Source of the DNA: Pristiophorus japonicus
Taxonomy: Eukaryota
NCBI RefSeq assembly: GCF_044704955.1
Contig: NC_091995.1
Location: 17,732,001 to 17,796,000 of the forward strand
Reading direction: 5' to 3'
Length of the DNA: 64,000 nt
The translations under genes were made by a program, and so were the position numbers. The notes beneath the pieces are model-generated. The model had not been told where the DNA came from. It did not search any database and saw nothing but the letters and a program-made list of their open reading frames with translations. Shown piece after piece: positions 1 through 38,857 of this stretch; within the stretch, counting starts at the first letter, position 1, and each line of letters opens with the position of its first letter.

Positions 1-400
1 ATTATTTTAAATGTTTCTATAAGATCACCCCTCATCCTTCTGAACTCCAACGAGTAATGACCCAGTCTACTCAATCTATCATCATAAGGTAACCCCCTCA
101 TCTCCGGAATCAGCCTAGTGAATCGTTTCTGTACCCTCTCCAAAGCTAGTATATCCTTCCTTAAGTAAGGTGACCAAAACTGCATGCAGTACTCCAGGTG
201 CGGCCTCACCAATACCCAATACAGTTGCAGAAGGACCTCCCTGCTTTTGTACTCCATCCCTCTCGCAATGAAGGCCAACATTCCATTCGTCTTGCTGATT
301 ACCTGTTGCACCTGCAGTATGTTGTAATTTCTCCCCATTCAAATAGTACTGCCTTTTACTGTTTTTTTTTCCGTAGGTGGATGATCTCACACTTTCTGAC
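1..400 (-). mobile_element. CR1-like LINE fragment (continues left of the window)
   Basis: Homologous to the CR1 RT C-terminal region (LVRPHLEYC, RFTRLIP). Confidence 0.8.
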
Positions 401-1154
401 ATTCCGAAATTTCCAAAATTACAAGTATTGTTTAGATTTAGCCAGGAGTGTGTTCCGCTGCTCTGCCAAATGACAATTTTCAGGATACATTGTTCAGATT
501 TATTTAGAAAAACGCGGATATTAATGCAGTATATGGCTGTATATGGTTTTGTTAGTTGGTGCGATAAAGCATGGCACGAAATTGAGTTAAAGTGCCTGTA
601 ACAAGAAAATGTCCCTCAGCCCATCAAAGATCAACTCTTCAAAGATCAACACTGACTCCCACCATGGCATTTCATTATATTCTGTGTATCCCCAATATTG
701 ACCTATATTGCTCACTGTATGAAACATGACGTTTTCAGACAAACACGTTATTCTTGATTTTAGTTTAAAATGTCCTTTTTCACTATTCTTCATTGATCGA
801 TCTGATTCTACTGTCATGGCTTCGAAGGAATAATTGGCATGCGATTTATCTGTACCATTGAACACGAATTTCTGCCCCAGCTCACGAACGACCTTATTTC
901 AAGACTGAAACACTCATGCGTCGCTTATCTTTTCTCATGTCTCATCTCTTTACACTTCGGAGAGGTTTTGTTGCTCGTCGAGGCACCCTTTCCAGTCCAG
1001 ATATATTTCTATGCCACAGTGAAAAGAGCTAAAATTAGGATTCTAAGAATAGTTGACTCGTGTATTTCGAGCCTTAGCACGGCGATCTGACGACATCATG
1101 GCTCTATATTCTAACACTTTGTTAGTGCTTAAAAAATTTGCTTCGTTACATCTA

Positions 1155-1177
1155 CATATATATATATATATATATAT
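1155..1177. repeat. (TA)n microsatellite; paralog (TA/CA) at ~6483-6510
   Basis: Direct reading. Confidence 0.9.
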
Positions 1178-1204
1178 AAATCGACTATTACTCATCATAT
1201 TATG

Positions 1205-1760
1205 AACAACAACAACTTGTATTACTATCGTGCTTTTAACGTAGTAAAACATCCCAAGGCGCTTCACAGGAGTATTATAAGACAAAACGATTGACACAAA
1301 GCCACATAAGGAGAAATTAGGGCAAGTGACCAAAAGATTATTCAAAGATATAGATTTTAAGGAGCGCTTAAAGGAGGAAAGGAATGTAGAGAGGTGGTGA
1401 CATTTAGGAAGGGAGCTCCAGAGCTTACGGCCTAGACAACAGAAGGCACAGCCACCAACGGTTGATCGATTATAATCGGGGATGCTCAAGAATGTGAGGA
1501 GTGCAGATATCTCATGGGGTTGTGGGGCTGGAGGAGATTTCAGAGAGAGGGAGGGTGAGATCATGGAGGGAATTGAAAACAAAGATAAGAATTTGGAAAT
1601 CATGGCGTTGCTTAACTGGGAGCCAATATAGGTCAGCGGGCACAGTGGCTGATTGGTGAGAGTTAGGATACAGGCAGCCGAGTTTCGGATCAGCTCTAGT
1701 TTACACAGGGTTACATATGGGAGGCCAGTCAGGGGTGTGTTGGAATAGCCAAGTCTAGAG
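1205..1760 (-). mobile_element. L2/CR1-group LINE 3' fragment with (GTT)n tail; duplicate at ~6535-7090
   Basis: ORF 1043..1603 contains GGCAFCCLGRKLWSSLP...SSFKRSLKS, resembling the L2 C-terminus; AAC repeats mark the tail. Confidence 0.65.
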
Positions 1761-1939
1761 GTCCCGTCAGAATTAAGGAATAGAGAGGAATAGGAAATGA
1801 TTTTAAGAAATTGTTCATATCTGTATTATTTTAAAATTTTGATTAATTCCTTGCAATTTGGTGCCACTCACTTGGAATAGGCTTCAAGCCTGATTTCCGA
1901 TAGGGCTTGCTAAACAATAAATGATCAGTGATCATTATG

Positions 1940-2535
1940 CCTGTCTGTATTTGAAATCGGCACATTTCAACAACTGTACAGGGCATTGGCAAGACAACAC
2001 CTGGAGTACTGCATACAGTTGGGATCTCCTTATTTAAGGAAGGATATACTTGCACCAGAGGCAGTTCAGTGAAGGTTGCTGAGATGAAGGGGTTGTCATA
2101 CGACACAGATTGAGCAGGCTGGGCCTATTCTCATTGAAGTTTAGAAGACGGAGAAGTAATCTTATTGAAACGTATAAGATTCTGAAGGGGCTTAACAAGG
2201 TAGATTCACAGTGGGTGTTTCCCCTCGTGGGGGAATCTACAACTAGGGTGCATAGTTTCAGAATATGGGATCGCCACATTTAAAACAGAAATGAGGAGCA
2301 ATTTCCTCTCTCAGAGGATCGTTAATCATTGAAATTCTCTACCTCAGAGAGCTGTGAAGACTGGGAAATTGAATGTATTTAAGGTGGAGATAAACAGATT
2401 TTTGAAACATAATGGAGTCAAGGGTTATGGGGAGCAGGCGGGAAATTGAGTTGAGTCCATGAAATTATTGAACAGCACAGCAGGCTCGAACGTCGAAATG
2501 GCTTACGCCTGTTCATATTTCTTATGTTCTTATCT
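1940..2535 (+). mobile_element. CR1-like 3' fragment; duplicate at ~7290-7862
   Basis: HLEYCIQ...RR..L.E.YKIL region and ttcttatgttcttat tail. Confidence 0.8.
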
Positions 2536-2588
2536 GTTTGTATGTTCTGTTGTATCAATCATTTCATGTTTGGAAAGCTATCCATTCT

Positions 2589-4492
2589 ACATAGAAACAT
2601 AGAAAATAGGTGCAGGAGTAGGCCATTCGGCCCTTCGAGCCTGCACCACCATTCAATGAGTTCATGGCTGAACATGCAACCTCAGTACCCCATTCCTGCT
2701 TTCTCGCCATACCCCTTCATCCCCCTAGTAGTAAGGACTATATCTAACTCCTTTTTGAATATATTTAGTGAATTGGCCTGAACAACTTTCTGTGGTAGAG
2801 AATGCCACAGGTTCACCACTCTTTGGGTAAAGACGTTTCTCCTCATCACAGTCCTAAATGGCTTACCCCTTATCCTAAGATCAGGACTTCCCCAACATTG
2901 GGAACATTCTTCCTGCATCTAACATGTCTAAACCCATCAGAATTTTCAACGTTTCTATGAGATCCCCTCTCATTCTTCTGAAATCCAGTGAATACAAGCC
3001 CAGTTGATCCAGTCTTTCTTGATATATCAGTCCCGCTATCCCGGGAATCAGTCTGGTGAACCTTCGCTGCACTCCCTCAATAGCAAGAATGTCCTTCCTC
3101 AAGTTAGGAGACCAAAATTGTACACAATACTCCAGGTGTGGTCTCACCAAGGCCCTGTACAACTGTAGCAATACCTCCCTGCCCCTGTACTCAAATCCCC
3201 TCGCTATGAAGGCCAACATGCCATTTGCTTTCTTAACCGCCTGCTGTAACTGCATGCCAACCTTCAATGACTGATGTACCATGACACCCAGGTCTCGTTG
3301 CACCTCCCCTTTTCCTAATCTGCCACTATTCACATAATAGTCTGTCTCTCTGTTTTTACCACCAAAGTGGATAACCTCACATTTATCCACATTATACTTC
3401 ATCTGCCATGCATTTGCCCACTCACCTAACCTATCCAAGTCACTCTGCAGCCTCATAGCATCCTCCTCGCAGCTGACACTGCCACCCAACTTAGTTTCAT
3501 TCCCAAATTTGGAGATACTCCATTTAATCCCCTCGTCCAAATCATTAATGTACAATGTAAACAGCTGGGGCCCCAGCACAGAACCTTGCGGTACCCCACT
3601 AGTCACTGCCTGCCATTCTGAAAAGTACCCATTTACTCCTACTCTTTGCTTCCTGTCTGACAACCAGTTCTCAATCCATGTCAGCACACTACCCCCAATC
3701 CCATGTGCTTTAACTTTGCACATTAATCTCTTGTGTGGGACCTTGTCGAAAGCCTTCTGAAAGTCCAAATATACCACATCAACTGGTTCTCCCTTGTCCA
3801 CTCTACTGGAAACATCCTCAAAAAATTCCAGAAGATTTGTCAAGCATGATTTCCCTTTCACAAATCCATGCTGACTTGGACCTATCATGTCACCTCTTTC
3901 CAAATGCGCTGCTATGACATCCTTAATAATTGATTCCATCATTTTACCTACTGCTGATGTCAGGCTGACTGATCCATAATTCTCTGTTTTCTCTCTCCCT
4001 CCTTTTTTAAAAAGTGGGGTTACATTGGCTACCCTCCACTCGATAGGAACTAATCCAGAGTCTATGGAATGATGGAAAATGACTGTCAATACATTTGCTA
4101 TTTTCAAGGCCACCTCCTTAAATACTTTCGGATGCAGACCATCAGGCCCTGGGGATTTATCGGCCTTCAATCCCATCAATTTCCCCAACACAATTTCCCG
4201 ACTAATAAGGATTTCCCTCAGTTCCTCCTTCTTACTAGACCCGCTGACCCCTTTTATATCCGGAAGGTTGTTTGTGTCCTCCTTAGTGAATACTGAACCA
4301 AAGTACTTGTTCAATTGGGCTGCCATTTCTTTGTTCCCATTATGACGTCCCCTGATTCTGACTGCAGAGGACCTACGTTTGTCTTTACTAACCATTTTCT
4401 CTTTACATAACTATAGAAACTTTTGCAGTCCGTCTTAATGTTCCCTGCAAGCTTCCTCTCGTACTCTATTTTCCCTGCCCTAAACAAACCCT
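2589..4492 (-). mobile_element. Young 5'-truncated CR1/HER1-like LINE with long RT ORF
   Basis: 504-aa ORF 2881..4395 (KSPGPDGLHP, YLDFQKAFDKVPH, SGVPQGSVLGP, LVRPHLEYC) and a (TTTCTATG)n tail. TTCT duplication at 2585-2588 and 4493-4496; the paralogous unit carries the empty site (ccattctgtacaattg, ~7911-7926). Confidence 0.93.
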
Positions 4493-4679
4493 TTCTGTGC
4501 AATTGATTTTTTAATGCCCGATTTGTTGATCCATATGCACATCATAAACATCTCAGAATAATTAAATCTGACAAACGAAACAATATAACATTGCCCTCCA
4601 ATAGTAGCTTCCTATATTTCCAATTTGTACTCTCATCTTGGGTTTGGAAACCAACATAACAGAAAATAACCGTCAATCA

Positions 4680-5192
4680 CACTGAAAGACAGGAAGTCCT
4701 TAGAGTGGGTGCAGGAAAGATTTAGAAGAATGCTTCCAGGGATCAGGGACTTCAGTTGCGTGGATGGACTGGAGAAGCTGTGGTTGTTCTCCTCAGAGCA
4801 GAGAAGGTTGAGAGGACATTTGAAAGAGGTTTTCAAGATCATGAGGGGTCTGGACAGAGTTGATTTAGAGAAACTGTTCCCATTGGCAGAAGGATCGAGA
4901 ACCAAAAGACACAGATTTATGATGATTGGCAGAAGAACCAAAGGCGACTTGAGGAAAAACGTTTTCACGCAGCCAGTGGTTAAGATCTGGAATGCACTGC
5001 CTGAAAGGGTGGTGGAGGCAGAGAACATTGTCGCTTCCAAAGAGCATTGGATGAGTACGTGAAGGAACATTTTTTTAAGGACGAATGGAAAGGGCGGGTG
5101 AGTGGAATTGGTGAAGTGTTCTTGTAGAGAGAGCTGCCACAGGCCATTTGGGCCGAATGGCGGCCTTCAATGCTGTAACTGTTCTATGATTC
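4680..5192 (+). mobile_element. CR1-like 3' fragment abutting the leader remnant; duplicate at ~8098-8620
   Basis: ORFs 4709..5062 and 8064..8474 (LFSLEQRRLRGDL, KNVFTQPVVKIWNALP); ttctatgattct tail. Confidence 0.85.
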
Positions 5193-5271
5193 TGGAATTG
5201 TTCACCTTAGAGGAGCTAAGGTTACACGTAAATAGAACATCTCGGCCATAAATGTTAAATAATAACCTTAC

Positions 5272-5613
5272 CAGTTTCCACGGTCAAAATTGTGCCGTTT
5301 CCATATGCAGCACCGATTCCCATGATATGCACTTCGCAAAAATAGAACGCTGTATCTCCTGGTTTCAGCTTGATTATTCGAATGGATGCGTTTTTCCTCT
5401 GGCGGAAATCCTCTTCACTTGCCCCGATCACCCTGCCTCTAAATTCCGCTGTACTGTTGGAAACTTCAATTCCCTGTTTGGAGCCTCGGTACCACCTGTA
5501 GCTGCCAATTCCCACGGGACCCTCATAGCTGCAAACCAGGTCTGCTGTCTGTCCCACGTTTTTGGTCAGAAATTGCGGGCTCTGAAATACTGTGATATCT
5601 CCAACAGTAATTG
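5272..5613 (-). CDS. NCR3: VJ-type Ig V-domain exon (copy B), NKp30/NCR3-like
   Basis: Bounded by tgtacag| and G|gtaagg; 342 nt, phase 1/1, open. Differs from copy A at 12 nt by manual count. Overlaps ORF-track 5255..5557. Confidence 0.88.
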
Positions 5614-8600
5614 CTGTACATGGGTGAAGTAAATGAAATACAAAATGGAGTGAGATATTTGCCCTTTGAAATTAATGCTTCCTATGTTAGGCATGAAGGC
5701 TCACAGTGTTTAAATTGGTCTTTAACCCTTTACATATTACAAGTATTGTTTTGTTTTAGGCGGGGGGTGGGGGGGGGGGGGTTGTTCCGCTACTCTGCCA
5801 AATGGTAATTTTCATGATACATTGTTCTAATATATTTAGAAAAACGTGGATATTAATGCAGTATATGGCTGTATATGGCCTGTTTTGTTACATAAAGCAT
5901 GGCACTAAATTGAGTTAAAAAGCCTGTAACAAGACAATGTCACTCAGCCCATCAAAGATCAAACCTTCAAAGGTCAACACTGACTCCCACCATGGCATTT
6001 CATTATATTCTGTGTATCCCCAATATTGACCTTTATTGCTCACTGTATGAATTATGACGTTTTCAGACAAACACGCTGTTCTTGATTTTAGTTTAAAATG
6101 TCCTTTTTCACTATTCTTCATTGATCGATCTGATTCTATTATCATGTCTTGAAAGGAATAATCGGTGTGCGATTTATCTGCACCATTTAACACGAATTTC
6201 TGCCCCAGCTCACTAACGACCTTATTTCAAGACTGAAACACTCATGTGTCGCTTATCTTTTCTCATGTCTCATCTCTTTACACTTCGGAGAGGTTTTGTT
6301 GCTCGTCTAGGCACCCTTTCCAGTCCAGATATATTTCTGTGCCACAGTGAAAAGAGCTGAAATTGGGATTCGAAGAATAGTTGACTCGAGTATTTAGAGG
6401 CTTAGCATGGCTATCTGATGAATCATGGCTCTATATTCTAACACTTTGTTAGTGCTTTAAAAAATTGCTTCGTAACATCTAAATATATATATATACATAC
6501 ATATATATATCGACTATTGCTCATCATATTATGAACAACAACAACTTGAATTTCTATCGTGCTTTTAACGTAGTAAAACATCCTAAGGCGCTTCACAAGA
6601 TATTATAAGACAAAACGATTGACACAAAGTCAAAGGAGAAATTAGGGCAAAGTGATCAAACGATTGTTCAAAGATATAGATTTTAGGGAGCGACTTAAAG
6701 GAGGAAAGGGATGTAGAGAGGTGGTGATATTTAGGGAGGGAGCTGCAGAGGTTAGGGCCAAGGTAACAGAAGGCACGGCCACCAATGGTTGATCAATTAT
6801 AATCGGGGATGCTCAAGAATGTGAGGAGTGCAGATATCTCATGGGGTTATGGGGCTGGAGGAGATTACAGGGAGAAGGAGGGTGAGATCATGGAGGGAAT
6901 TGAAAACAAAGATAAGAATTTGGAAATCATGGCGTTGCTTAACTGGGAGCCAATATAGGTCAGCGGGCACAGTGGCTGATTGGTGAGAGTTAGGACACAG
7001 GCAGCCGAGTTTTGGATCTGCTCTAGTTTACACAGGGTTGAATTTTGGAGACCAGTCAGGAGTGTGTTGGAATAGTCAAGTCTAGAGGTCCTGTCAGAAT
7101 TAAGGAATAGAAAGGAATAGGAAATGATTTAAAGAAATAATTCCTATCTGTATTATTTTAAAATGTTGATTAAATGCTTGCAATTTGGGGCCACTCACTT
7201 GGAATAGGCTTCATGCCTGATTTCCGATAGGGCTTGCTAAACAATAAATGATCAGTGATCATTATGCATGTCTGTATTTGAAATCGGCACATTTCAACAA
7301 CTGTACAGGGCATTGGCATGACCACACCTGGAGTACTGCATACAGTTGGGATCTCCTTATTTAAGGAAGGATATCCTTGCATCAGAGGCATTTCAGAGAA
7401 GGTCCGTGAGATGAAAGGCTTGTGATATGACAACGGGTGAGCAGGCTGGGTCTATTCTCATTGAAGTTTAAAAGACGTAGATGTAATCTTATTGAAACGT
7501 ATAAGATTCTGAGCGGGCTTGACAAGGTAGTTGCACAGTGGATGTTTCCCCTCGTGGGGGAAATCTACAACTAGGGGGGCAGAGTTTCAGAATATGGGGT
7601 CGCCACATTTAAAACAGAAATGAGGAGGAATTTCCTCTCTCAGAGGGTCGTTAATCATTGAAATTCTCTACCTCAGAGAGCTGTGAAGGCTGGGTAATTG
7701 AATGTATTTAAGGTGGAGATAAACAGATTTTTGAAACATATTGGAGTCAAGGGTTATGGGGAGCAGGCGGGAAATGGAGTTGAGTCCATGAAATTATTGA
7801 ATGGCACAGCAGGCTCGAACGTCTACATGGCTTACGCCTGTTCATGTTTCTTATGTTCTTATCTGTTCATATGTTCTGTTGTATCAATCATTTTATGTTT
7901 GGAAACTTATCCATTCTGTACAATTGCTTTTTTAATGCCCGATTTGTTTATCCATATGCACATAATAAACATCTCAGAATACTTAAATCTGACAAATGAA
8001 ACAATATAACAATGCACTACAAGAGTAGCTTGCTATATTTCCGATTTTACTGTCACCTTTCAATTGGAAACCGACATAACAGAAAATAACCGGCGATCAC
8101 ACTTTAGGAAAGACGTGAAGGCCTTAGAGTGGGTTCAGAAAAGATTTCGAAGAATGATTCCAGGGATGAGGGACTTCAGTTGCGTGGATGGACTGGAGAA
8201 GCTGGGTTTGTTCTCCTTAGAGCAGAGAATGTTGAGAGGAGATTTGAAAGAGATTTTCAAGGTCATGAGGGATCTGGAGATAGTTGATTTAGAGAAAGTG
8301 TTCCCATTGGCAGAAGGGTCGAGAACCAAAGGACACAGGTTTATGATGATTGGCAGAAGAACCAAAGGCGACATGAGGAAAAACGTTTTCACGCAGCCAG
8401 TGGTTAAGATCTGGAATGCACTGCCTGACAGGGTTGTGGAGGCAGAGAAAATTGTCGCTTTCAAAGGGAATTAGATAAGTACATGAAGGAACATTTTTTT
8501 AAGGACTACTGGAAAGGGCGGGTGAGTGGAACTAGGTGAAGTGTTCTTTACAGAGAGCCGCCACAGGCTCGTTTGGCCGAATGGCGCCCTTCTATGCTGT

Positions 8601-8708
8601 AACAGTTCTATGATTCTATGTTTTTAAGCTGGAATTATTCACCTTAGAGCAGCGAAGGTTACACGTAAATAGAACATCTCGGCCATAAATGTTAAATAAT
8701 AACCTTAC

Positions 8709-9050
8709 TAGTTTCCACTGTCAAAATTGTGCCATTTCCAAATGCAACACCGATTCCCATGATATGCACTTCGCAAAAATAGAACGCTGTATCTCCCGGT
8801 TTCAGCTTGATTATTCGAATAGACGCGTTTTTCCTCTGGCGGAAATCCTCTTCACTTGCCCTGATCACCCTGCCTCTAAATTCCGCTGTACTGTTGGAAA
8901 CTTCAATTCCCTGTTTGGAGCCTCGGTACCACCTGTAGCTGCCAATTACCACGGCACCCTCATAGCTGCAAACCAGGTCTGCTGTCTGTCCCACGGTTTT
9001 GGTCAGAAATTGCGGGCTCTGAAATACTGTGATATCTCCAACAGTAATTG
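8709..9050 (-). CDS. NCR3: VJ-type Ig V-domain exon (copy A), NKp30/NCR3-like
   Basis: Bounded by tgtacag| and |gtaagg; 342 nt, phase 1/1, open. Encodes ITVGDITVFQSPQFLTKTVGQTADLVCSYEGAVVIGSYRWYRGSKQGIEVSNSTAEFRGRVIRASEEDFRQRKNASIRIIKLKPGDTAFYFCEVHIMGIGVAFGNGTILTVET. Has canonical C, W, DxAxYxC and a germline J-like GNGTxLxV, and closely matches human NKp30 motifs IGSxxW, GxEVxNxTxEFRGR and C-x-V-x-x-(L/M)-G-x-G...GNGTxLxVE. Confidence 0.88.
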
Positions 9051-10134
9051 CTGTACATGGGTGAAGTAAATGAAATACAAAATGGAGTGAGATATTTGCC
9101 CTTTGAAATTAATGCTGCCTATGTTAGGTATGAGGGCTCACAGCTTTTAAACGAGTCTTTAACTGCTGACTCTCACCATGGCATTTCATTGTGTTCTGCG
9201 TATCCCCAATATTGACCTCTATTGCTCGCTGTATGAACTATGACAAGTTTTCAGATAAACACATTATTCTTGATTTTAGTTTAAAATATCCTTTTTCTCT
9301 ATTCTCCATTGCTCGTTCCGATTCTGCTTTCACGGCTTCGAATGAATAATCGGCATGCAATTTATTTGTGCCATTTAACACTAATTGCTCCCCCCGCTCA
9401 CTAACTACCTTATTTCAAGACCGAAACACTCATGCGTTGTTTATCCTTTCTCATGTCTCGTCTCTTTACACTTCGGAGGGGTTTCATTGCTCCTCAAGGC
9501 ACCCTTTCCAGTCCAGATGTATTTTCGTGTCACAGTGAGCAGGGCTGAAGATAGGATTTTAACAATAGTTGATTCATGTATTTAGAAGCTCAGCAAGGTT
9601 ATCTGACACTATCATGGCTCCATGTGCTAGCACTCTGTTAGCGCCTTTAAAAAAATATATTACGTTACATCTTTATACAGCAATTAACCATCTTACTCTC
9701 ACGTCAGAATATAGAAATAAGAGGATTGGGAATAAATTATATTAAGAAATTGTTCGTATCTATATTATTTTAAAATATTGTTTTAATTCCTTGTAGTATT
9801 GGCCATTGACAGAGGTAGGCTCCAGGTTTGACTTTCGATGGGGATTGCTAAACAATAATGGATCAGTGATCATTAGCTGTGTCTGTATTTTAAATGGACA
9901 CAGTTCTCAATTTTATCAACCACTTCAAGTTTGGCAAACTGGCCATTCGGTACCATTGATATTTTTAAATCTTTAACGCCCTATTTATTTATCCATATAT
10001 CCATCATCACGTCTAAGTGTACGTGAATTTGACAAATCAAACAGTATAATAACGCACTACAAGAGTAGGTTGCTATATGATTTGTACTCTCATTTTGAAA
10101 TTGGAAGCCGACATAACATAAAATAGTTCCTTAC

Positions 10135-10186
10135 CGGCGATCATGGTCGTTATCCAGATTGTTCCAATAACATTGCTAAGGTTCAT
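10135..10186 (-). CDS. NCR3: Leader (signal peptide) exon of NKp30/NCR3-like gene A
   Basis: Minus strand reads cagcATG AAC CTT...ATC GCC G|gtaagg = MNLSNVIGTIWITTMIA plus a phase-1 donor, with A at -3. It splices in frame to the V exon acceptor at 9050, giving MNLSNVIGTIWITTMIAAITVG-DITVFQSP. Confidence 0.85.
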
Positions 10187-10364
10187 GCTGTCGGTGCAGT
10201 TCTGGGCGTGAAGTCAGTTGTGGAACAATTTTGCAGGATCAGTGAAGAGAAGTAACAACCTAATTCTAACCGTAGGGGTGCGCATGATACAGTATGTGAC
10301 GTGACAGAAACAATTACCCGATTGAAATCAACTGTTTCTGTTTCTTCCCACCCTTGCAAATACA

Positions 10365-10575
10365 ATGTCAGCTGTGGCTCAATGCGTAGCACTCTGCCGC
10401 CTCTGAGTTAGAAGTTTGCAGGTGCAGCTCCCACTCCAGGGACCTGAGCACAACAAACTAGGTTGACACTCCAGTGTTGTTGCTGCATTGTCGCAAGTGC
10501 CATTTTTGGGATGAGACATTAACACTGAGCCTCTCAGGTGAACATAAAATACCCCACGGCACTATTTTGAAGATT
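10365..10575 (+). mobile_element. tRNA-derived Deu-domain SINE (SacSINE1-like), 5' part
   Basis: Head tggctcaatgcgtagcactc with a box-B-like segment, then gatgagacattaa and ccccacggcactattttgaaga. Same family at 14450-15060, 45960-46220 and 55790-56760. Confidence 0.7.
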
Positions 10576-27579: not shown

Positions 27580-28581
27580 TATAGAAACATAGAAATCTAC
27601 AGCGCAGAAGGAGGCCATTTCAGCCAATCCGCGCTGGTCGACAAAAAGCCACACGGCCCTCGATCAGTAGCGGTGAAGGTTACATATAAACCTATGAAAA
27701 ATGAACAATGGCAAAAATGTAAAGTGTATCCGGCCCAACCAGTTCACCCCACACAATTGTTCCACTCCTTGCACTGCAACATTCTACACTTCACACAACC
27801 GAAGCCATGCCATCTCCTGGGAGAGGAAGAAACAGCTAAAAACCTAGGCCAATTGGGGAAAATAAGCTTGGAAAAATTCCTCTCCGCCCCATCCTGGCGA
27901 TCGAAACTAGTTGACGAGATCACCCTGGCCGTATTCGATTCCCTGCAGTACTTACCATCGTATCTGCGCTAGCCAACAAGAGGTTATGCAGTCTAATCCC
28001 ACTTAGCAACTCTAGCTCCGTAACCCTGCAGGTTACGGCACATCAAGTGCCCAACCAAACACCTTTTAAATGTGGTGAGGGTTTCTGCATCCACCACCCT
28101 TCCAGGCATTGAGTTCCAAGCACCTATAACCCTGTGCGTGAAGAAGCTTCCCACAAATTCCCTCTGAACCTTCCACCAACCACAAAATTATCCCCCCTCA
28201 TAATTGACCCCTCCACCAAGGGAAATAGGCCCTTGCTATCTAATTTATCCAAGCCCCTCAAAATTTCAAACATTTCAACGAGGTCTCCTCTCAGCCTCCT
28301 CTGTTCCAATGAGAACAAACCCCACCTATCCAATATTTAATCATAGCTAAGATTCTCCATTCCAGGTAGCATCCTAATAAATCTCCTCTGCAGCCTTTCT
28401 CGTGCAGTCACGTCCTTCATATAATGAGGTGACCAGAACTGCATGCAGTACTCCAGGTGCAGCCTGACCACAGTATTATAAAAATTAAGCATAATCTCCC
28501 ATCTCTTGTATGCTATGCCTCCGTCAATAAAGGCAAGCATTCTTATCCACCTGGTTTGCTACTTTCAGGGATTCTGTGGAC
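27580..28581 (-). mobile_element. CR1/HER1-like LINE, 3' part of the element hosting the Tx1 pair
   Basis: ORF pieces LAFI..GI.YK....LNFYNTVVRLHLEYCMQFWSP and GLFSLEQRRLRGDL; tail near 27580. Colinear with 42951-44640 once the Tx1 pair is removed. Confidence 0.85.
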
Positions 28582-29543
28582 CAATGGTGGAGCTTTGGAG
28601 GCGTGGCCTATTCAGTTGGAGCTGTGCTGCTGTGAGAGAAGGAACTCCCTGCTTTGCTCCTGCCTGGAAGGCCTAGAGTGAACCCTGAGACCAGCCCAGG
28701 AAGAGGAGGAGGGGGCTGGCTTACTAAAATTCAACGTCCAGAGGGAGAGGAGGAGAGCAGAACATTTATCAACTACTTACTACTACAGAGAGTTGGAGAG
28801 AGGGGGAAAAGAACAACTTGAGAAAACACCATCCAGTGTGGAAGGAGGGAGAGCCATTTCTACAATTTTCGACAGGTGGGTGTGTTTTGGTGCATTCCCT
28901 GAAAGAATTTGTTGTATCAGTGGGGGGAGGAAAGAAGACCATTCGAGGGCCGAAACATCGTGGCGGGTGTGTGTGTGTGGAAGTGTGTGTGGGGGTCTTG
29001 CTTACTGCTAGGTCCCACACACCACTGAAGCACCCCTCCCCCATTGCCTAGCCTAGAATAGCTGAAGCTACCTGGCTCAAGTATTACTAATCACCCTATT
29101 TAACATCGTTGGGAGTGTGTGCCTGGGTGGCTCCAGCTACCCCAGGTAAAGACATCTTCTCCCCCCACCCGAAGACCATCGACAAGGACTGTGCCTTGAT
29201 TTTTTCCATCACCCTAGGAAAAACGCCCACCCATCGCTGTGAGGGGAGACCTGCCCTCGCAGCTTCCCTCTTTCCCACCCCCCCTCACTCTTTCTCACCC
29301 CACCTCTCTCTTTCTCTCTCTCTCTGTCTCTCCCCTCTCTCTCTGAGAGCCCTTTCCTCAAAATTTGGAAATAAGACAATTAAGACAACTGAGCAGAGGG
29401 AGCAAGGCCCCTCCCCATTCTTTAACTAGGGGAGAGGTGTGCCCCATTAAGAGATCCCTCTGTTCAAAACATCAACGAGGCCAATTAAAGACCATTAAGG
29501 CCTGTGACTTTGCGGTGAGTGTAGCCTTTAAAGGGACCCCGTG

Positions 29544-31621
29544 ATGGCGACCCCATCCAAGCCGGTGGCAGGGCCAGCTAAGACGTACGCGCAGGCGGCA
29601 TCCACATCCACGGCGCCTCCTGCTGCCCTGCCACCATTCAGACTCATAACAAAAAAACACGGGGTCAAGAGCTACACTCACCCCACAATGAGCATCGAGG
29701 AGTGCGTGCGGGCGATGGCTGGGATAGTCGGCCCCTCGGCCATTGTTGCGGCCTCCAAGATGTCTGGGAAGGCTGTATTCTTCCTGGGGTCGGAGCGGGC
29801 GGTGTCACTGGCCCTCGAAAAGGGGCTCACGGTAGGCGGGACGTTCCTGCCGGTGGACCCTCTCGAGGCCACCGCACAGAGGGTCATCCTTTCAAACGTC
29901 CCGTCCTTTGTTCCCGCTGAGCTCCTCCTCCCTCACCTACACCAACTGGGGGAGGTAAGGTTGGGTATCAACCCCATACCACTCGGCCTCAGGGAGAAAA
30001 GCCTGCGCCATGTGATCTCCTTCCGCCGCCAGCTCTTTGTCCGGCTGGCGCGGGAGGAGACGACGGAGGGCAATTTTAATGTGGTGCACGAGGGGACTGC
30101 CTACCGCGTCTTTTGGACGTCGGATGGTGTGCGGTGCCATGCCTACAGGGAGGTGGGGCACGTTCGCAAGAACTGCCCCCCCTCCAAGGCCACCAAACCA
30201 CCGAAGGCGGCCAAGGCTGGCACCGCCGCCACCCCTCCCCCTAGTAGCGTCCGCGTGCCGGGAGCCGTAGGTGCGCGGGCATCGTCGGGGGCCTTTGTTT
30301 TCACGGTCTCCGGCGGGGGGGAGGGAGAACGTCCGATCGGAAAGAAGGCGCAACATCTTGAGGCGGGTCACCTCAGTGCGCCAGAAAGTTTAACCACCGC
30401 GCTCAGCCCAACCCCGTCACCGGCGAGCGCGGGGCGCCCTGAGCCTGTGTCCGAGCCCTTGACCAATATCACAGAGGGGTTCGGGCGTGGGCAAGTTAAG
30501 AAAAAGGGGGGGGGGCGGAGCGGGAAGCCTCGGCAGACATGGAGGTCTCCCTGCCACCGTGCACCCCCAGGAACAAAAGGAGGCGCGCTCCAATGAGGCG
30601 GAGGGTGAGCAACATCCCTCCGCGGAGGAGTCGGTGCCCGCCGCATGTCCCGTGTCCCCCACCAGCGCCCCCAAACTGCGCCCTAGATGGGAGGAATCTG
30701 TCCCCGGGGAGGGAGGGGCAGTCGAGGCCGCCCAGCCTCTGCCTCCCGGGGATGGCGTGGAGGGTCTGCCTGTCATGGGGGGCGTGGGGCCAGCGGAGGA
30801 ACGCGTAGCCGCCGGGTCGAGCGTCCCGGGAACTGAGGCGGGCGGGGCCGAAAAGTCCGGACCTGAGCCCGCCCAGCCAATATCCAACTTCCCCCGGGAC
30901 ATGCTCGACTCGGCAGAAATACACAGTATTAACAATTTTAATGAATCTGTACACGCTGGGCCGGGGATTGGCGGTGGGGAGGGAGAAGAACACCAACCCT
31001 CACCCCCTACTTTGGAGCTGGGGTACTTGGAGGACCTGGAGAATTTCCTAAACCAGGTCTCTCCGAGCTCCCCGGTTCCTGGGGTGGAGGGGGAACCACT
31101 TCCGCTGTCTCTTCCTGACCCAGCACCGCTTTTAAAAGAGCCCAGTGGGGACTCCTCTGTCAACGATCCCGGGGGGTGGGATCGGGGCAGAGCCAGGGCC
31201 AGATGGAGCGGCCGGGCCATTTGCCGTACCTCGTGCGGTCGACGGGCCGGCTGCTGCCGGCGACCTCCTGGAGGGGGACGAGGACTCGGTGGGGGACTCG
31301 GGAGAAGATCTCGAGTCCATCGCCAGTGAGGCGGTGGATCTCCTCGTGCCCGCCGCTGAGTCCCCCCTCATTCCCGTCAAGGAGCTCCGCGACTTTTTAG
31401 CCCAGAGCCAGGGTCGCCGCAACTGAGCCCATCTGGCCCTGGAAAGATGGTCCGAGCCGGGGCTGCTCGTCGCGTCCATCCGCGCCGCCGCTAAAACCAT
31501 GGCCGCGGGTGAGCCCTTATCAAAGGCGCAAGGCCTTGAGCTGTGCCGGCTCAAAAGGTTCCTTGCTGGGCTGCTGAAGGAGTGGTGGTCAACAAACGAC
31601 TCCACTACCCCCCCACCATAG
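29544..31621 (+). pseudogene. Tx1 copy 1 ORF1 (gag-like zinc knuckle plus low-complexity acidic/Pro region), frameshifted
   Basis: MATPSKP...KKHGVKS...IVAASKMSGKAVFFL...VILSNVP...CHAYREVGHVRKNCP (knuckle intact as CHACREVGHVRKNC in copy 2). Frameshifts at G-runs near 30510 and 31175, stop near 31424. Confidence 0.85.
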
Positions 31622-31651
31622 GTTAGGTAGTGGCTGCACTATGCTTTTGTC

Positions 31652-34600
31652 ATGAAGATAACCATAGCCAGCCTCAACATCAACGGCGGCAGAGAGGCAC
31701 ACCGTAGATTTAACAATTTTTCGCTCCTGCGGGAGGGGAAATATCCGGTGTGCTTCCTGCAAGAAACCCACACCGTTCCGGGAGAAGAAGCCACGTGGCT
31801 CCTGGAATGGCAAGGAGATGTCCGCATGAGCCACCTCACTACCACTTCTTGTGGGGTGGCCATCTTGTTGGCCCCGCATTTTCAGCCAGAGATCTTGGGG
31901 GTCGAGGAGCCCGTGCCAGGCCGCTTGCTGCACGTCACAGTTTGCCTGGGGGACATGCAGCTCCATCTCGTGAGCGTATACGCCCCTCAGCCCGGCCCGC
32001 AGCAAACACGCTTCTTCGAAGAAGTGTCCGCTCTTCTTGGCTCTGTAGACGTCGGCGACTGCATTGTCCTCGGGGGGGATTTTAACTGCACCCTCGAGGC
32101 GAGGGACCGCTCCGGTGCCCCGCAGAGCATGACGGCGATGGAGAAGTTGAGGGACCTGGTCGGGTCCTTCGACTTGGTGGACGTCTGGCGAAATCTCCAT
32201 CCCGACTCCAGCGCCTTTACTTGGGTGAGGCCTGGAGTAGGATGGTCCAGAGTCGACCGCCTTTACGTGTCACGGGCGTACATTTCCTGCATCCCGGCGG
32301 CCTCCATGCGGCCGGTGCCATGTCCGGACCACCACCTGGTATGGGCGGAGCTCACTTCGCTCCGCCCGAGGACGGGGTCCACGTACTGGCATTTTAACAA
32401 CCAGCTGCTGGAGGACGTGCGGTTTCAGGACTCGTTCCGTCGTTTCTGGGCCGACTGGAGAAGGAAGCAAGGGGGCTTCCCCTCCTTGAGGCTATGGTGG
32501 GACGTGGGCAAGGCTCACGTCTGCGTCTTCTGTCAAGAGTACGCGAGGGGGTCGACCAAGATGCGGGCGGCCAGGGTCGGGCGCCTAGAAAAAGAGGTGC
32601 TCGAACTGGAGTCCCGTCTCGGTCAAGTCATCGAGGACCCGGCCCTGCGGACGGTGTATGAAGCGAAGAAGGCCGCGCTGAAGGACCTGCAGCTCGTCGG
32701 GTCCCGAGGCGCGTTCGTGAGGTCGCGGATCCAGTTCCTGCGGGATCTGGACCGCGGCTCTCCCATCTTCTACTCGCTGGAAAAAAGACAGAGTGTCCGT
32801 AAGCAGCTCTTGACGCTGCTGGCCGACGACGGCTCTCTCGTCTCGGATTCGGAGGGCATCAACAACAGGGCCCGTGAATATTACGGGGCCCTGTTCTCTC
32901 CGGAGCAGTCCATCGAGGTAGAGTTTTGTGTGAGGACCTGCCGAAGGTCGGCCCGGAGGGCACTGGAAATCTGGAAGCTCCGCTGAGCCTGGCGGAGCTG
33001 ACTGGCGCCCTCGCCCGGCTCTTGAGGGGAAAAGCCCCGGGGCTGGGCGGGCTGACCGTGGAGTTCCACAGGGCATTCTGGGATGTCCCGGGGAGCGACT
33101 ATGCGCGGGTCCTGGGGGAAAGTCTGGCGACCGGGGAGATGCCCCTCTCTTGTTGCAGGGCAGTCATCATCCTGCTGCCTAAGAAGGGCGATCTCCGCCT
33201 CCTTAAGAACTGGCGCCCGGTCTCCCTCCTCAGCATGGACTACAAAATCTTCGCCAGGGCGATGTCTGTTCGCCTTGGCGCCGTGCTGGACCACATTATC
33301 CACCACGACCAGTCCTACACAGTCCTGGACCGGACAATCCACGATAACATCCATCTGGTCCGGGACCTCATCCATCATTCCCAGGAGGCTGGTCTGTCGG
33401 TCGCCTTCCTATCTCTCGACCAAGAGAAGGCGTTCGACAGGGTGGATCACGACTATCTGTTCGGAACTCTGCACGCTTTCGGGTTCGGAACGCATTTTAT
33501 CGTCCGGATCCGACTTTTGTACGCCGCCGCGGAGTGTCTGTTAAAGGTTAACGGGTCCTTGACAGCGCCCCTTCGCTTTGGGAGAGGGGTGCGCCAGGGA
33601 TGCCCCATGTCCTGCCAGTTATATGCTATCTGCGTGGAGCCTTTCCTGCGCCTCCTGCAGACGAGGTTGACGGGACTGGCTCTGCAAGGGCCGGGCGTGG
33701 AGGTCGTCCTCTCGGCTTACGCCGATGACGTGCTCCTCACGATAGAGGATCCCGCTGACCTGCAGAGGATGCGTGAGTGCCAGGAGATTTACTTGGCCGC
33801 ATCCTCCGCCAGGATCAACTGGAAGAAATGTTACAGACTCCTGGTGGGTCAGTGGCGGGTGGACTCCCTGCCGGAGGAGCTCAGGCCTTTTGCCTGGAGC
33901 ACGACCCATCTCCTCTATCTGGGAGTCTACCTTAGCCCCGACGAGGAAGCCTGGCCGGCAAACTGGTAAGAGCTGGAGGCCAAGGTCGCCGCTCGCCTAG
34001 GGCGCTGGACAGGACTGCTCTGAGTGCTGTCCTACAGGGGTCGAGCACGAGTCATAAACCAGCTGCTGGCCGCCATGTTGTGGTACCGGCTGTTCACTTT
34101 GATCCCTCCCCCTGCGTTTGTCACCAAGATACAGAAGAAGCTGGTGGACTTCTTCTGGAACAACAGAAAGCACTGGGTCTCTGCCGCGGTCTTGAGTCTC
34201 GCGCTTGGGGAGGGCGGTCAGTCGTTGGTGTGCGTCAGCACCCAGCTCACGACTTTCCATCTTCAGACCCTGCAGAACCTTTACGTCGAGCCCCCTCCTA
34301 GGTGGCGTGCTCTGGCGACGTATTTCTTCAGCCTGCAGCACGGCCTGAACTACGACACGCAGCTCCTGTTTTTGAGCTTGGGGGGGCATCAGGACCACCT
34401 TCCAGGGGCTGCCTGTCTTTTACAAGGAACTCACCAGGGTCTGGAACAAAGTCTCCACCAAGCGCAGCTCTCCACCGGCTGGAGTGGCGGCTGTCCTGCA
34501 GGAGCCGCTGCTCGGGAATCCATACCTCCATGACCGAGGTTTTAGATGGCGGTCGGACGAGAGGGCTGTGGCTGGTGAGGTGACCAGGGTCAGGGACCTG

Positions 34601-35542
34601 CTCGATGGTGGAGGAGCGGGCTGGATGGCGCCAGACACGCTGGCGCGGCGCCTAAATTCCACCAATGTCCGCCGCGCGGCCGATGCCATCGAGTCGCTAA
34701 AAACAGCTCTGGGCCCTGACTCCGTTAGGTGCATCGAGGAGGCTCAAGCACGTGGGGAGATCCCGTCTGAACTTACCCCCGTCCGGATGGAATTCCTCAT
34801 CGGCGCCAAACCCCGGAACCTCCCTCGGGAGCCGGCGCCTCACAACTTGAGCCACCTCGAGGAAATCCCCTCCGTGCCTTTCAGTTCCGCGCGGAGGGGT
34901 TTCTTGTACTGGCTGCTCCTGCACACTCTCAACTTTGCCATCCTCGCCTGCCATCCGGACACGCCATGGCATACCATCTTGCCGTCCGGAGAAGTCGGGG
35001 GTCCCCGATGGAGGGCACTCTACCCGGGAGTCCTCCCAGTATTTATCGGGGACTTGGCCTGGAGGGTGGTGCACGGAGCAGTCCCGTGCAATAAATTTTT
35101 AAGCCGGTTCACGGGCTCCTAGGCCGCCTGCAATTTCTGCAGTCTGGAAGAGTCCGTGTTCCATGTTTTTATGGAATGCACGAGGTTGCAGCCCCTGTTT
35201 TATTATTTAAAGGGGCTGCTCCTGAAATTCTGGCTGCACTTCAGTCCCACACTCCTGATCTTTGGACACCCTGTGCGGAGGGGAGCGGGTAGGTCCGAGG
35301 GCCTCCACGTAGGACTGCTCCTGGGCACGGCCAAGGGTGCCATCAGCCGATCCAGGCAGCGGGCGGTCGAGAGGGTCGTTCAACCTGACTGCCTGCCTCT
35401 CTTCCGTGCGTACATCCGTGCCAGGGTGTCCTTGGAGTTGGAGCACGTGATGTCCACCGGTACGCTGGCGGCCTTCCGCGAGAGGTGGGCACCAGAGGGT
35501 CTGGAGTGCATCGTCACGCCCGGCAACCAAATTTTTATTTGA
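31652..35542 (+). pseudogene. Tx1 copy 1 ORF2 (APE endonuclease-RT-zinc finger), disrupted
   Basis: Motifs SLNING, FLQETH, GGDFN, RVDRLY, PDHH; RT motifs KNWRPVSLL, LDQEKAFDRV, GVRQGCPMS, AYADD, YLGV; then LSYRGR.LVINQL and CxxC...HVFMEC. Several frameshifts and stops. Confidence 0.93.
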
Positions 35543-36731
35543 TGTTATGTTTTAAAGTTTAATTTGTTTTAATTGCCGGTGTTTTTAGTGTCCCCTCCAC
35601 TTTTATAGGGTGCACTTGGAAAAAAAAAGATTTTAATGCCCCCAAAAAAACTTTAAAAAACCCCAAAAAAACAAAAACAAAAATAAAAGGGCCTTGGAAA
35701 TGTTTGGTGCGCCCCCCCAGATCGATTTTATGATTTAATGTTTTAATTTTCTCACAAAAAGAGTTCTGTGGACCAATGGTGGAGCTTTGGAGGCGTGGCC
35801 TATTCAGTTGGAGCTGTGCTGCTGTGAGAGAAGGAACTCCCGGCTTTGCTCCTGCCTGGAAGGCCTAGAGTGAACCCTGAGACCAGCGCAGGAAGAGGAG
35901 GAGGGGGCTGGCTTACTACAATTCAACGACCAGAGGGAGAGGAGGAGAGCAGAACATTTATCAACTACTTACTACTACAGAGAGTTGGAGAGAGGGGGAA
36001 AAGAACAACTTGAGAAAACACCATCCAGTGTGGAAGGAGGGAGAGCCATTTCTACAATCTTCGACAGATGGGTGTGTTTTGGTGCATTCCCCGAAAGACT
36101 TTGTTGTATCGGTGCGGGGAGGAAAGAAGACCATTCGAGGGCCGGAACATCGCGGCGGATGTGTGTGTGTGGAAGTGTGTGTGGGGGTCTTGCTTACAGC
36201 TAGGCCCCATACACCACTGAAGCACCCCTCCCCCATTGCCTAGCCTGGGATAGCTGGAGCTACCTGGCTGAAGATTTACTAATCACCCTATTAAACATCG
36301 TTGGGAGTGTGTGCCTGGGTGGCTCCAGCTGTCCCAGGTGAAGACATCTTCTCCTCCCACCCGAAGACCATCCCATAAGACTGTGCCTTGCTTTGTTTTC
36401 CATCATCTAGGGAGTGCGCCCCTGAAAAATACCCACCCATCGCTTTGAGGGGAGACCTGCCCTCACAGCTTCCCTCTTTCCCACCCCCCCCCTTTCTCTC
36501 TCGCTGTCACTTTCTCTGTCTCTCCCCTCTCTCTGAGAGCTCCTTTCCTCCTTAATTGGAAAAGCAATTAAGACAATTCAGCAGAGGGAGCAAGGCCCCT
36601 CCCCAATTGTCAACTAAGGGAGAGGTGTACCTCATTGAGAGCTCCTCTGCTCATAAATTCAAACGAGGCCAATTTAAGAACATTAAGGCCTGTGACTCTG
36701 GGGTGGGTGTACCCCTTAAAGGGACCCCGTG

Positions 36732-38827: not shown

Positions 38828-38857
38828 GTTAGGTAGAGGTTGCACTATGCTTTTGTC

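What the first reader, a model, noticed from the sequence alone, without database searches (positions are those of the whole stretch)
5272..10186. One leader serving a tandem series of NKp30-like V exons: multi-domain receptor or alternative V-exon choice
Seen: a single intact leader precedes two intact phase-1/1 V exons 3437 bp apart, and I find no TM exon or intact leader between them. All joins (L-VA, L-VB, VA-VB) stay in frame. Established: mammalian NKp30 has one V domain; NKp30 and its ligand B7-H6 occur in sharks and Xenopus, where the families can expand as whole genes. Inference: here expansion is intragenic, giving either a 2-3 V-domain NKp30-like receptor or splice-based selection among variant V domains, a non-rearranging way to diversify an antigen-receptor-like VJ domain.
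Basis: partly seen in the sequence, partly recalled or inferred. Interest (0 to 1): 0.8.

Follow-up and report, generated by a model that had tools for sequence, protein, structure and literature searches.

The report
Shark NKp30-like gene, tandem V exons
A shark immune-receptor gene of the NKp30 family has had the exon for its sensing domain copied in tandem behind a single start exon, so it probably encodes a receptor with two or more sensing domains, a design already predicted for related genes in sharks and frogs; no transcript could be checked.

Summary
On the minus strand, one intact leader exon (10186-10135) is followed by two intact 342-nt phase-1/1 V exons (9050-8709 and 5613-5272). 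Their splice signals are identical and they differ at 12 nt. I found no other leader and no TM exon between them.

The domain belongs to the NKp30/NCR3 family. Human NKp30 is the best solved match by both sequence and fold, and the exons sit in a strongly supported clade with shark NCR3 genes.

The array comes from nested tandem duplications of a ~3.4-kb unit. A third unit runs off the window's left edge. The exons are significantly better conserved than their flanks (3.5% vs 8.6%, p 0.0013; dN/dS 0.35).

Multi-V NKp30-like receptors are not new as a design. Public gene models with 2-5 adjoining V domains plus one TM exist in horn shark, catshark, bamboo shark, devil ray, Japanese sawshark, frogs, newts and geckos. 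This gene's nearest relatives, however, have a single V.

Nothing supports Dscam-like exon choice.

The scan has noted this genome's NKp30 clusters before, including an unchecked two-V note 22 kb away.

Verdict: a real, recent intragenic V-exon duplication and a new member of a known kind.

The parts
10135..10186 (-). Leader (signal-peptide) exon, phase 1 at its 3' end, donor GTAAGG
   Evidence: It is homologous to the leader of Chiloscyllium punctatum NCR3 model GCC38509 (tblastn). It is the only convincing leader in 10400-1.
9051..10134 (-). Intron A. Parts of it are 75-84% identical to the introns of units B and C.
   Evidence: Self-BLAST: 9166-9672 matches 5980-6464 (83.6%) and 652-1153 (84.3%); 9972-10125 matches 7931-8088 and 4510-4668.
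8709..9050 (-). V exon A (VA): a single-exon VJ-type V-set domain, phase 1/1
   Evidence: Pfam V-set E 1.9e-12. Best PDB sequence match is human NKp30, E 5.9e-16. AF2 pLDDT 92.5, and the top 4 Foldseek hits are all NKp30.
8120..8650 (+). LINE 3' fragment, antisense to the gene, downstream of VA (approximate limits)
   Evidence: It matches other copies at 16003-15709 and 12949-12660. The equivalent copy below VB carries an RT-tail-like ORF on the + strand at 4709-5062.
8089..8098 (-). Leader remnant of unit B: the last ~8 nt of the leader plus GT. The donor context lacks 7 nt and there is no ATG.
5614..8088 (-). Unit B intron, which would serve as the VA-VB intron together with 8089-8708. It is 92.4% identical to the unit C intron.
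   Evidence: 5783-7917 matches 451-2588.
5272..5613 (-). V exon B (VB): intact, phase 1/1, 96.5% identical to VA
4669..4678 (-). Leader remnant of unit C (degenerate)
2589..4489 (-). LINE insertion specific to unit C. It contains a 504-aa reverse-transcriptase ORF at 2881-4395.
451..2588 (-). Unit C intron. It predicts a third V exon to the left, beyond a further LINE fragment (1-450) and the window edge.

Best explanation
This is a shark NKp30 (NCR3)-family receptor gene whose V-exon unit has been duplicated in tandem inside the gene.

Shown:
- The gene has one functional leader exon.
- Two intact, near-identical VJ-type V exons follow it, each with the same strong splice sites and the same phase.
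- The duplicated units carry only dead stubs of the leader and no TM exon.
- The duplications are nested. An older one left introns ~84% identical, and a younger one of 3437 bp left units ~91-92% identical.
- A third unit runs off the left edge of the window.
- The exons are better conserved than their flanks.

Inferred:
- The primary transcript starts at the single leader and runs leftwards.
- Because every join is in frame and both exons have equal splice signals, the default product joins L-VA-VB, perhaps with a further V, to TM and tail exons left of the window.
- This would give a receptor with two or three tandem V domains, like the multi-V NKp30-like models annotated in other sharks, a ray, amphibians and geckos.
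- Occasional skipping of one V exon is possible, but it is not a programmed choice.
For: Anatomy and frames.

Duplication map: (7911-9163 matches 4490-5726 at 91.4%; 5783-7917 matches 451-2588 at 92.4%; intron A matches B and C at ~84%).

Dead leader stubs. No other leader or TM exon.

Family assignment:
- Pfam V-set.
- NKp30 is the best PDB sequence match, E 5.9e-16, against 2.9e-10 for the best TCR.
- AF2 pLDDT is 92.5, and Foldseek ranks 1-4 are all NKp30 with TM 0.80-0.83.
- C27, W40, D86, Y90, C92 and the G-x-G-T motif are all present.
- VA and VB are sisters (100/100) inside a 7-row clade (100/99) with nurse shark NCR3 QTT61898 and horn shark, catshark and bamboo shark genes.

Constraint:
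- The exon has 12/342 substitutions and 0 indels; the flanks have 77/893 and 5 indels (Fisher p 0.0013).
- dN is 0.023 and dS 0.067.
- At the flank rates, the chance of no stop is ~0.32 and of no indel ~0.15.
- Of 9 polarisable differences, VB carries 2, both synonymous. VB's branch length in the tree is 0.

Precedent:
- 23 of the 36 best library hits have 2 or more full V domains.
- Models with adjoining V domains and one TM include Heterodontus XP_067865773 (3 V), C. plagiosum XP_043533794 (2 V), Mobula XP_062903900 (2 V), Pristiophorus japonicus UPI00398F42BF (2 V), Bombina XP_053577099 (3 V) and others.
- Horn shark V1 and V3 pair with catshark V1 and V2, so a multi-V gene has been kept across shark orders.
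- The linker spacing at the predicted VA-VB join equals that in these models.
Against: - No transcript was seen.
- The TM and tail exons and the third V are outside the window, so the gene may be truncated or dead. Its neighbour in the window has a broken V exon.
- All five other rows of its clade come from genes with one V per leader. A two-V form would therefore be a lineage-specific novelty with no orthologue to vouch for it.
- The 1.84-billion-protein library holds no representative with more than 64% identity to VA. Word searches found no same-species model.
- dN/dS below 1 is not significant on its own (Fisher p 0.14).
- The low-divergence tract runs about 60 nt beyond each exon end (9117-8654). 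Gene conversion could explain this as well as selection does.
- Public multi-V models are largely automatic predictions, and I could not inspect their loci.
Confidence: 0.55

Rival explanations
1. Only one V exon reaches the mature mRNA, or the whole gene is a decaying relic. The extra unit is a recent by-product of tandem duplication that is skipped or unused. It looks intact only because it is young or has been homogenised by gene conversion.
For: - The other members of the clade have one V per leader.
- The neighbouring paralogue is broken.
- No model of this gene was found in the protein collections.
- dN/dS below 1 is not significant (p 0.14).
- The conserved tract overshoots the exon by ~60 nt on each side, as a conversion tract would.
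- The chance of staying intact at the flank rates is not negligible, about 0.05.
Against: - The exon is significantly less diverged than its flanks (p 0.0013), with 0 indels against 5.
- Both exons keep identical acceptor and donor contexts.
- VB, the copy without a leader, shows no amino-acid change that can be assigned to it.
- Nothing in the sequence would make the spliceosome skip one of two equal exons.
Confidence: 0.3
2. Alternative, mutually exclusive use of VA, VB and perhaps VC from one leader. This would be splice-based selection among variant VJ domains.
For: - L-VA and L-VB joins are both in frame with equal splice sites.
- 6 amino-acid differences exist. Five of them lie in or next to the BC-loop, alpha2 and FG-loop regions that flank the human NKp30 contact residues.
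Against: - Nothing enforces exclusivity. VA-VB is also in frame and the intron is 3095 nt.
- There is no long-range docking/selector complementarity. Only a 17-nt, 82% intra-exon match was found.
- 0 of the 6 differences fall on positions equivalent to the 11 human contact residues named in Table II as shown.
- Two or three near-identical exons are a poor repertoire.
- Every isoform set seen for multi-V relatives keeps all V domains: horn shark 3 isoforms, sawshark 2, Mixophyes 3, Pleurodeles 2, Pelobates 2, and Xenopus 2 plus a fragment. Isoforms that lack a V might not have clustered with these.
Confidence: 0.08
3. Assembly artefact: two haplotypes or a collapsed and re-expanded repeat written as a tandem duplicate.
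For: - Tandem near-copies in a repeat-rich immune cluster are a classic trouble spot.
- No reads could be laid on the region.
Against: - The units differ by 8.6% in non-coding sequence, with 5 indels.
- They differ by a 1.9-kb LINE insertion present only in unit C.
- They show a nested history of 84% and 92% identity.
- This is far more divergence than alleles would show.
Confidence: 0.04

Closest known systems
Shark NCR3 (NKp30) family genes: nurse shark QTT61898 (MT914154-61 series, Kinlein et al. 2021) and the horn shark, catshark and bamboo shark models
   Same: - A single-exon VJ-type V domain, 55-64% identical to VA.
- The same clade, with 100/99 support.
- A homologous leader.
- The same motifs: the EFRGR-type C'' segment and the Y/F-G-x-G-T G strand.
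   Different: - Those genes have one V per leader, while this gene carries at least two V exons behind one leader.
- The TM and tail of this gene were not seen.
- The Kinlein paper is not held. What I say of it is recalled from its abstract, and I could not check whether it describes multi-V forms.
Annotated multi-V NKp30-like receptors: Heterodontus XP_067865773 (3 V + TM), Scyliorhinus XP_038671255 (2 V), Chiloscyllium plagiosum XP_043533794 (2 V + TM), Mobula XP_062903898/900 (5 and 2 V), Pristiophorus japonicus UPI00398F42BF (2 V + TM), Xenopus tropicalis A0A803JGU9 (2 V), Bombina XP_053577099 (3 V + TM)
   Same: - Adjoining NKp30-type VJ domains with the same inter-domain spacing.
- One leader and one TM.
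- In most of them, the V domains of one protein are each other's nearest relatives, which points to intragenic duplication as here.
   Different: - They are only 36-42% identical to VA and lie in other clades.
- Their V domains are mostly older duplicates.
- Their sources name them pIgR-like, turtle-like or SIRP-beta-like.
Human NKp30 (NCR3), structures 3NOI and 3PV6
   Same: - It is the best sequence and fold match, with TM 0.80-0.83 and rmsd 2.1-2.4 Å.
- The model has the alpha2 helix at residues 66-72, where F85 and L86 sit in the human protein.
- The glycosylation site within the G-strand G-N-G-T motif is kept.
   Different: - Identity is only 35-36%.
- The human gene has a single V.
- Ligand binding and adaptor use are unknown for the shark gene.
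Tandem mutually exclusive exon arrays (insect Dscam1 type; recalled, not tested by any search)
   Same: Tandemly duplicated, same-phase exons for an Ig-type domain, placed behind a common upstream exon.
   Different: - No docking/selector pairing was found.
- There are only 2-3 near-identical copies.
- Joint inclusion stays in frame.

Membership tests
NKp30 / NCR3 family | V-set Ig domain encoded by one exon with a germline-joined J-like G strand (G-x-G-T) | tested here: met
   Each V is one 342-nt exon. Pfam V-set E 1.9e-12 for VA and 9.2e-12 for VB. G104, G106 and T107 are invariant across 19 family sequences.
NKp30 / NCR3 family | Closer to NKp30 than to TCR, Ig, SIRP or other V domains | tested here: met
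   PDB sequence search: four NKp30 chains at E 6e-16 to 1.4e-15, and the next hit is a TCR at 2.9e-10. Foldseek ranks 1-4 are NKp30, followed by SIRP-alpha.
NKp30 / NCR3 family | Groups with published shark NCR3 genes in a tree | tested here: met
   VA and VB fall in a 7-row clade (100/99) with nurse shark QTT61898. The tree has 54 rows from 28 named proteins; unnamed hits were left out.
NKp30 / NCR3 family | Stalk, TM (charged residue in activating forms) and signalling tail after the V | not testable with these tools
   No TM or tail exon of this gene lies in 1-10400. It must lie left of the window, if it exists.
NKp30 / NCR3 family | MHC linkage and B7-H6-type ligand | not tested
Ligand binding needs an experiment.
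Multi-V NKp30-like receptors (as annotated in other species) | Two or more V exons spliced together between one leader and one TM in the mRNA | tested here: inconclusive
   The genomic layout, phases and linker spacing fit.
Mutually exclusive tandem exon array (Dscam type) | A mechanism that enforces one exon per transcript (competing RNA pairing, frame or steric block) | tested here: not met
   VA-VB is in frame and the intron is 3095 nt. No docking/selector inverted repeats of 16 nt or more were found, apart from a weak intra-exon one.

The most novel reading that the evidence does not exclude
The array is used as a small splice-selected repertoire. Transcripts from the single leader would carry VA alone, VB alone, a third V alone, or combinations. 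This would give one gene several NKp30-type binding modules whose differences cluster beside the ligand-contact loops. It would be a non-rearranging, Dscam-like way of varying an antigen-receptor-like VJ domain in the oldest jawed vertebrates.

A milder version is that repeated, independent intragenic V-exon duplication is a family-wide way of tuning avidity in NKp30-like receptors from sharks to geckos.
Probability: 0.08. Interest if true: 0.75.

Novelty: new member of a known kind. Interest (0 to 1): 0.35.

Why it matters
NKp30 carries the best-known non-rearranging VJ domain and is used as a stand-in for the ancestor of antigen-receptor V genes. This locus catches a young intragenic duplication of that exon in a clade that otherwise has one V per gene.

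The library survey shows that multi-V NKp30-like receptors are common and recurrent across sharks, rays, bichir, amphibians and geckos. They are filed under misleading automatic names. In the papers I could search, I found no description of them.

If both exons are spliced in, the gene is a natural experiment in turning a one-domain NK receptor into a multivalent one. If not, it is an ordinary duplication relic.

Tried and rejected
- RNA evidence. The look-up of sequencing runs on the whole 4915-nt interval listed no run. In hindsight the single exon would have been the better query.
- Same-species gene model. A library search with VA gave no representative above 64% identity. A word search with the longer horn shark homologue P0007, chosen so that proteins of 147-469 aa would be candidates, gave 3 hits, none from sawshark. 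A word search with VA itself (62-198 aa candidates) gave none. Neither blank proves absence.
- Literature. Kinlein 2021, Flajnik 2012 and Ohta & Flajnik 2015 are not held. I ran four full-text searches: NKp30/shark/NCR3, the Kinlein title phrase, NKp30/Xenopus/B7H6, and NKp30 with five phrasings of 'two/tandem/multiple V domains'. From their listings, and from passages read in five papers, no paper describing multi-V NKp30 receptors turned up. The three unheld papers and closed supplements may well contain such a description.
- A LINE-derived TM exon. The only hydrophobic stretches between and below the V exons (~8380 and ~4956) are antisense LINE sequence. Other copies of that LINE lie elsewhere in the window, and this stretch has diverged at the flank rate. 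I rejected them as exons.
- Dscam-like pairing: rejected.
- Species. Earlier notes of this scan call the genome Japanese sawshark. I did not verify this; the sawshark protein I saw (P0012/P0155) is not encoded in this window.
Only single exons were used.


Full report
THE OBSERVATION

The gene lies on the minus strand. A 52-nt leader exon (10186-10135) starts at an ATG, encodes a 17-residue hydrophobic signal-like peptide and ends in phase 1 at G|GTAAGG. Two 342-nt exons follow at 9050-8709 (VA) and 5613-5272 (VB).

Both exons sit between the same 20 nt ending in AG and the same 20 nt beginning with GTAAGG. Both are open in phase 1/1, and their starts are 3437 nt apart. They differ at 12 of 342 nt: 5 synonymous changes, 6 amino-acid changes and the split last codon. 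L-VA, L-VB and L-VA-VB all read through without a stop.

A tblastn of VA against all 64 kb finds only VA, VB and one broken paralogue at 61.3-61.6 kb.

IS ANYTHING HIDDEN BETWEEN THE EXONS?

I scanned the minus strand from 10400 to 1 for ATG-started, hydrophobic, phase-1 mini-exons with a donor. The scan returned 15 rows. Only the known leader has a consensus donor, and only it is homologous to the leader of a relative, the C. punctatum model GCC38509.

At the leader positions of the second and third units, only the last ~8 leader nt plus GT survive (8098-8089 and 4678-4669). Seven nt of the donor context are missing, and LINE sequence lies directly upstream. The pattern occurs 3 times in the window, against 0.22 expected by chance.

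A hydrophobicity scan of 8708-1 gave two windows, both in the antisense of a LINE 3' fragment that sits below each V exon. Other copies of that LINE lie at 12.7-12.9 and 15.7-16.0 kb. The paralogue's genuine TM exon scored far higher as a positive control. tblastn with 14 family proteins found no stalk, TM or tail exon in 1-10400.

WHAT THE DOMAIN IS

- Pfam gives V-set for both exons, with E 1.9e-12 and 9.2e-12.
- Against all PDB sequences, the four best matches are human NKp30 chains (E 5.9e-16 to 1.4e-15). The next is a TCR at 2.9e-10.
- An AlphaFold model built on a 19-row alignment has mean pLDDT 92.5. Its four best Foldseek matches are again NKp30 (TM 0.80-0.83, rmsd 2.1-2.4 Å), ahead of SIRP-alpha and shark VNAR.
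- The model has a helix at residues 66-72. Human NKp30 has its characteristic alpha2 helix with F85/L86 at the aligned positions.
- The V-domain hallmarks C27, W40, D86, Y90 and C92 and the J-like G104-x-G106-T107 are present in both exons.

THE DUPLICATION

Self-BLAST shows three results:

- 7911-9163 (VA, its downstream LINE fragment and the leader stub) matches 4490-5726 at 91.4%.
- 5783-7917 (intron B) matches 451-2588 (intron C) at 92.4%.
- Intron A matches introns B and C at only ~84%.

The history is therefore nested. An older duplication made a second leaderless unit. A younger 3437-bp duplication, with breakpoints ~110-170 nt upstream of a V exon, then copied V plus downstream sequence plus leader stub plus intron.

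Unit C carries a 1.9-kb LINE insertion with a 504-aa RT ORF (2881-4395) that unit B lacks. The place where a third V exon is expected is occupied by another LINE fragment (1-450) and the window edge. So a third V can be neither confirmed nor excluded.

These differences (8.6% substitutions, 5 indels, a private LINE insertion) are far beyond allelic differences and argue against an assembly artefact. No reads could be laid to prove it.

CONSTRAINT

- In the VA/VB unit alignment, the exon has 12/342 substitutions and no indel. The flanks have 77/893 substitutions and 5 gap openings (Fisher p 0.0013).
- dN is 0.023 and dS is 0.067, close to the flank divergence, giving a ratio of 0.35. The dN-versus-dS contrast alone is not significant (p 0.14).
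- At the flank rates, the chance that neither copy acquired a stop is ~0.32, and that neither acquired an indel ~0.15.
- The low-divergence tract runs from 9117 to 8654, about 60 nt beyond each exon end. This fits conserved splice signals, and it fits a gene-conversion tract equally well.
- With the broken paralogue as outgroup, 9 of the 12 differences can be polarised. Seven fall on VA (3 amino-acid changes, the split codon and 3 synonymous). Two fall on VB, both synonymous.
- The protein tree gives VB a branch length of 0 and VA 0.045. VB, the copy that depends entirely on the upstream leader, is therefore not the one drifting. The numbers are small.

RELATIVES, AND THE KEY COMPARISON

A search of 1.84 billion representative proteins with VA gave 296 hits at E <= 1e-3.

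The most similar proteins have one V per leader. They are horn shark XP_067865395 (64%), nurse shark NCR3 QTT61898 (63%), and C. punctatum GCC38504 and GCC38509 (59% and 55%). The catshark model XP_038671257 (51%) has two V domains separated by a TM and a tail, and looks like two merged genes.

However, 23 of the 36 best hits have two or more full V domains. Whole-protein scores add up over domains, which lifts such proteins in the ranking. At least two of the 23 are not clearly NKp30-like: a yak SIRP-beta-like protein and a paddlefish hemicentin-like protein.

Models with adjoining V domains, one leader and one TM include:

- horn shark XP_067865773 (3 V)
- C. plagiosum XP_043533794 (2 V)
- Mobula XP_062903900 (2 V)
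- Pristiophorus japonicus UPI00398F42BF (2 V plus a TM containing a lysine)
- Bombina XP_053577099 (3 V)
- Hyperolius, Mixophyes, Heteronotia and Pleurodeles models (2 V each)

I built a tree of 54 V domains from VA, VB and 28 named proteins; unnamed hits were left out. Its main results are:

- VA and VB are sisters (100/100) inside a 100/99 clade. The other five rows are the four single-V proteins above and the first V of the merged-looking catshark model.
- In most multi-V proteins, the V domains of one protein are each other's closest relatives. This holds for Polypterus, Leptodactylus, Mixophyes, Hyperolius, Xenopus, Pelobates, Bombina, Pleurodeles, the sawshark protein P0012, C. plagiosum and Mobula V2-V5. 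It implies repeated intragenic duplication or concerted evolution.
- Horn shark V1 and V3 pair with catshark V1 and V2 (100/77 and 99/97). At least one multi-V gene is therefore old and has been kept across shark orders.

At the predicted VA-VB join, the spacing between the J-like motif and the next domain's first strand matches that in these models. All isoforms I could see of multi-V relatives keep every V. Isoforms that lack a V might not have clustered with them.

ALTERNATIVE EXON CHOICE

Nothing supports alternative exon choice. Joint inclusion is in frame, the inter-V intron is 3095 nt, and there is no long-range complementarity of the docking/selector kind. Only a 17-nt, 82% match inside the exons was found.

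I mapped the six amino-acid differences onto human NKp30 through the alignment, using the contact list in Li et al. 2011. I read passages of that paper, including Table II. None of the differences falls on a position equivalent to the 11 contact residues named there (I50, G51, S52, V53, L80, S82, F85, L86, E111, L113, G114). Those positions are identical in VA and VB.

Three differences lie 1-3 residues from contact-equivalent positions, two lie in the FG loop/G strand, and one is remote. The two domains look like near-copies with some change beside the binding site, not a repertoire.

WHAT COULD NOT BE DONE

- Word searches found no same-species model of this gene.
- The three papers most likely to describe domain architectures in shark and frog NKp30 families are not held. 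What I say of them is recalled.
- The species name (Japanese sawshark) comes from earlier notes of this scan and was not verified here.

VERDICT

The feature is real. It is a young, nested, intragenic tandem duplication of the V-exon unit in a shark NCR3-family gene.

- The most likely product is a receptor with two or more tandem V domains (about 0.55).
- The main rival is that one copy is not used or that the gene is a relic (about 0.3).
- Programmed V-exon choice is unlikely (about 0.08).
- Assembly artefact is unlikely (about 0.04).

The multi-V design is already present in public annotation for many species, including, by its source label, the Japanese sawshark, the species that earlier notes give for this genome. 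This is therefore a new member of a known kind, of moderate interest to comparative immunologists.

Noticed in passing
window 63792-63750 (leader), 61630-61305 (V), 57885-57741 (TM), 54651-54547 (tail), all on the minus strand: This is a second NKp30-family gene of inhibitory type. Its tail exon carries two tyrosine motifs like the ITIM-type tails of the horn shark and catshark relatives. Its V exon is broken: a 1-nt deletion, a TGA in the downstream frame, a 12-nt deletion, and the invariant Trp replaced by Cys.
   Followed up: partly
proteins P0001-P0036 (public models, not in the window): Multi-V NKp30-like receptor models are widespread in sharks, a ray, bichir, frogs, newts and geckos. 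They are filed under misleading automatic names (pIgR-like, turtle homolog-like, SIRP-beta-like, hemicentin-like). In most, the V domains of one protein are each other's nearest relatives, which suggests recurrent intragenic duplication or concerted evolution.
   Followed up: partly
window 2881-4395 (-), within 2589-4489: A LINE insertion with an open 504-aa reverse-transcriptase ORF is present in the third duplication unit only, so it is younger than the last duplication.
   Followed up: no
window ~8380 and ~4956 (-): The antisense strand of the LINE 3' fragment below each V exon encodes a strongly hydrophobic 19-residue stretch in an open frame. I judged it a property of the repeat and not a TM exon.
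   Followed up: partly
window 28000-42000: This is a block of ~60% G+C in a ~42% G+C background, with many long ORFs on both strands.
   Followed up: no
window 8709 vs 5272 and 8747/8741 vs 5310/5304: VA has F-G-N-G-T where VB and most relatives have Y-G-x-G-T. By outgroup, the upstream copy VA carries most of the polarisable changes (7 of 9) and VB carries 2. The asymmetry is not significant.
   Followed up: partly
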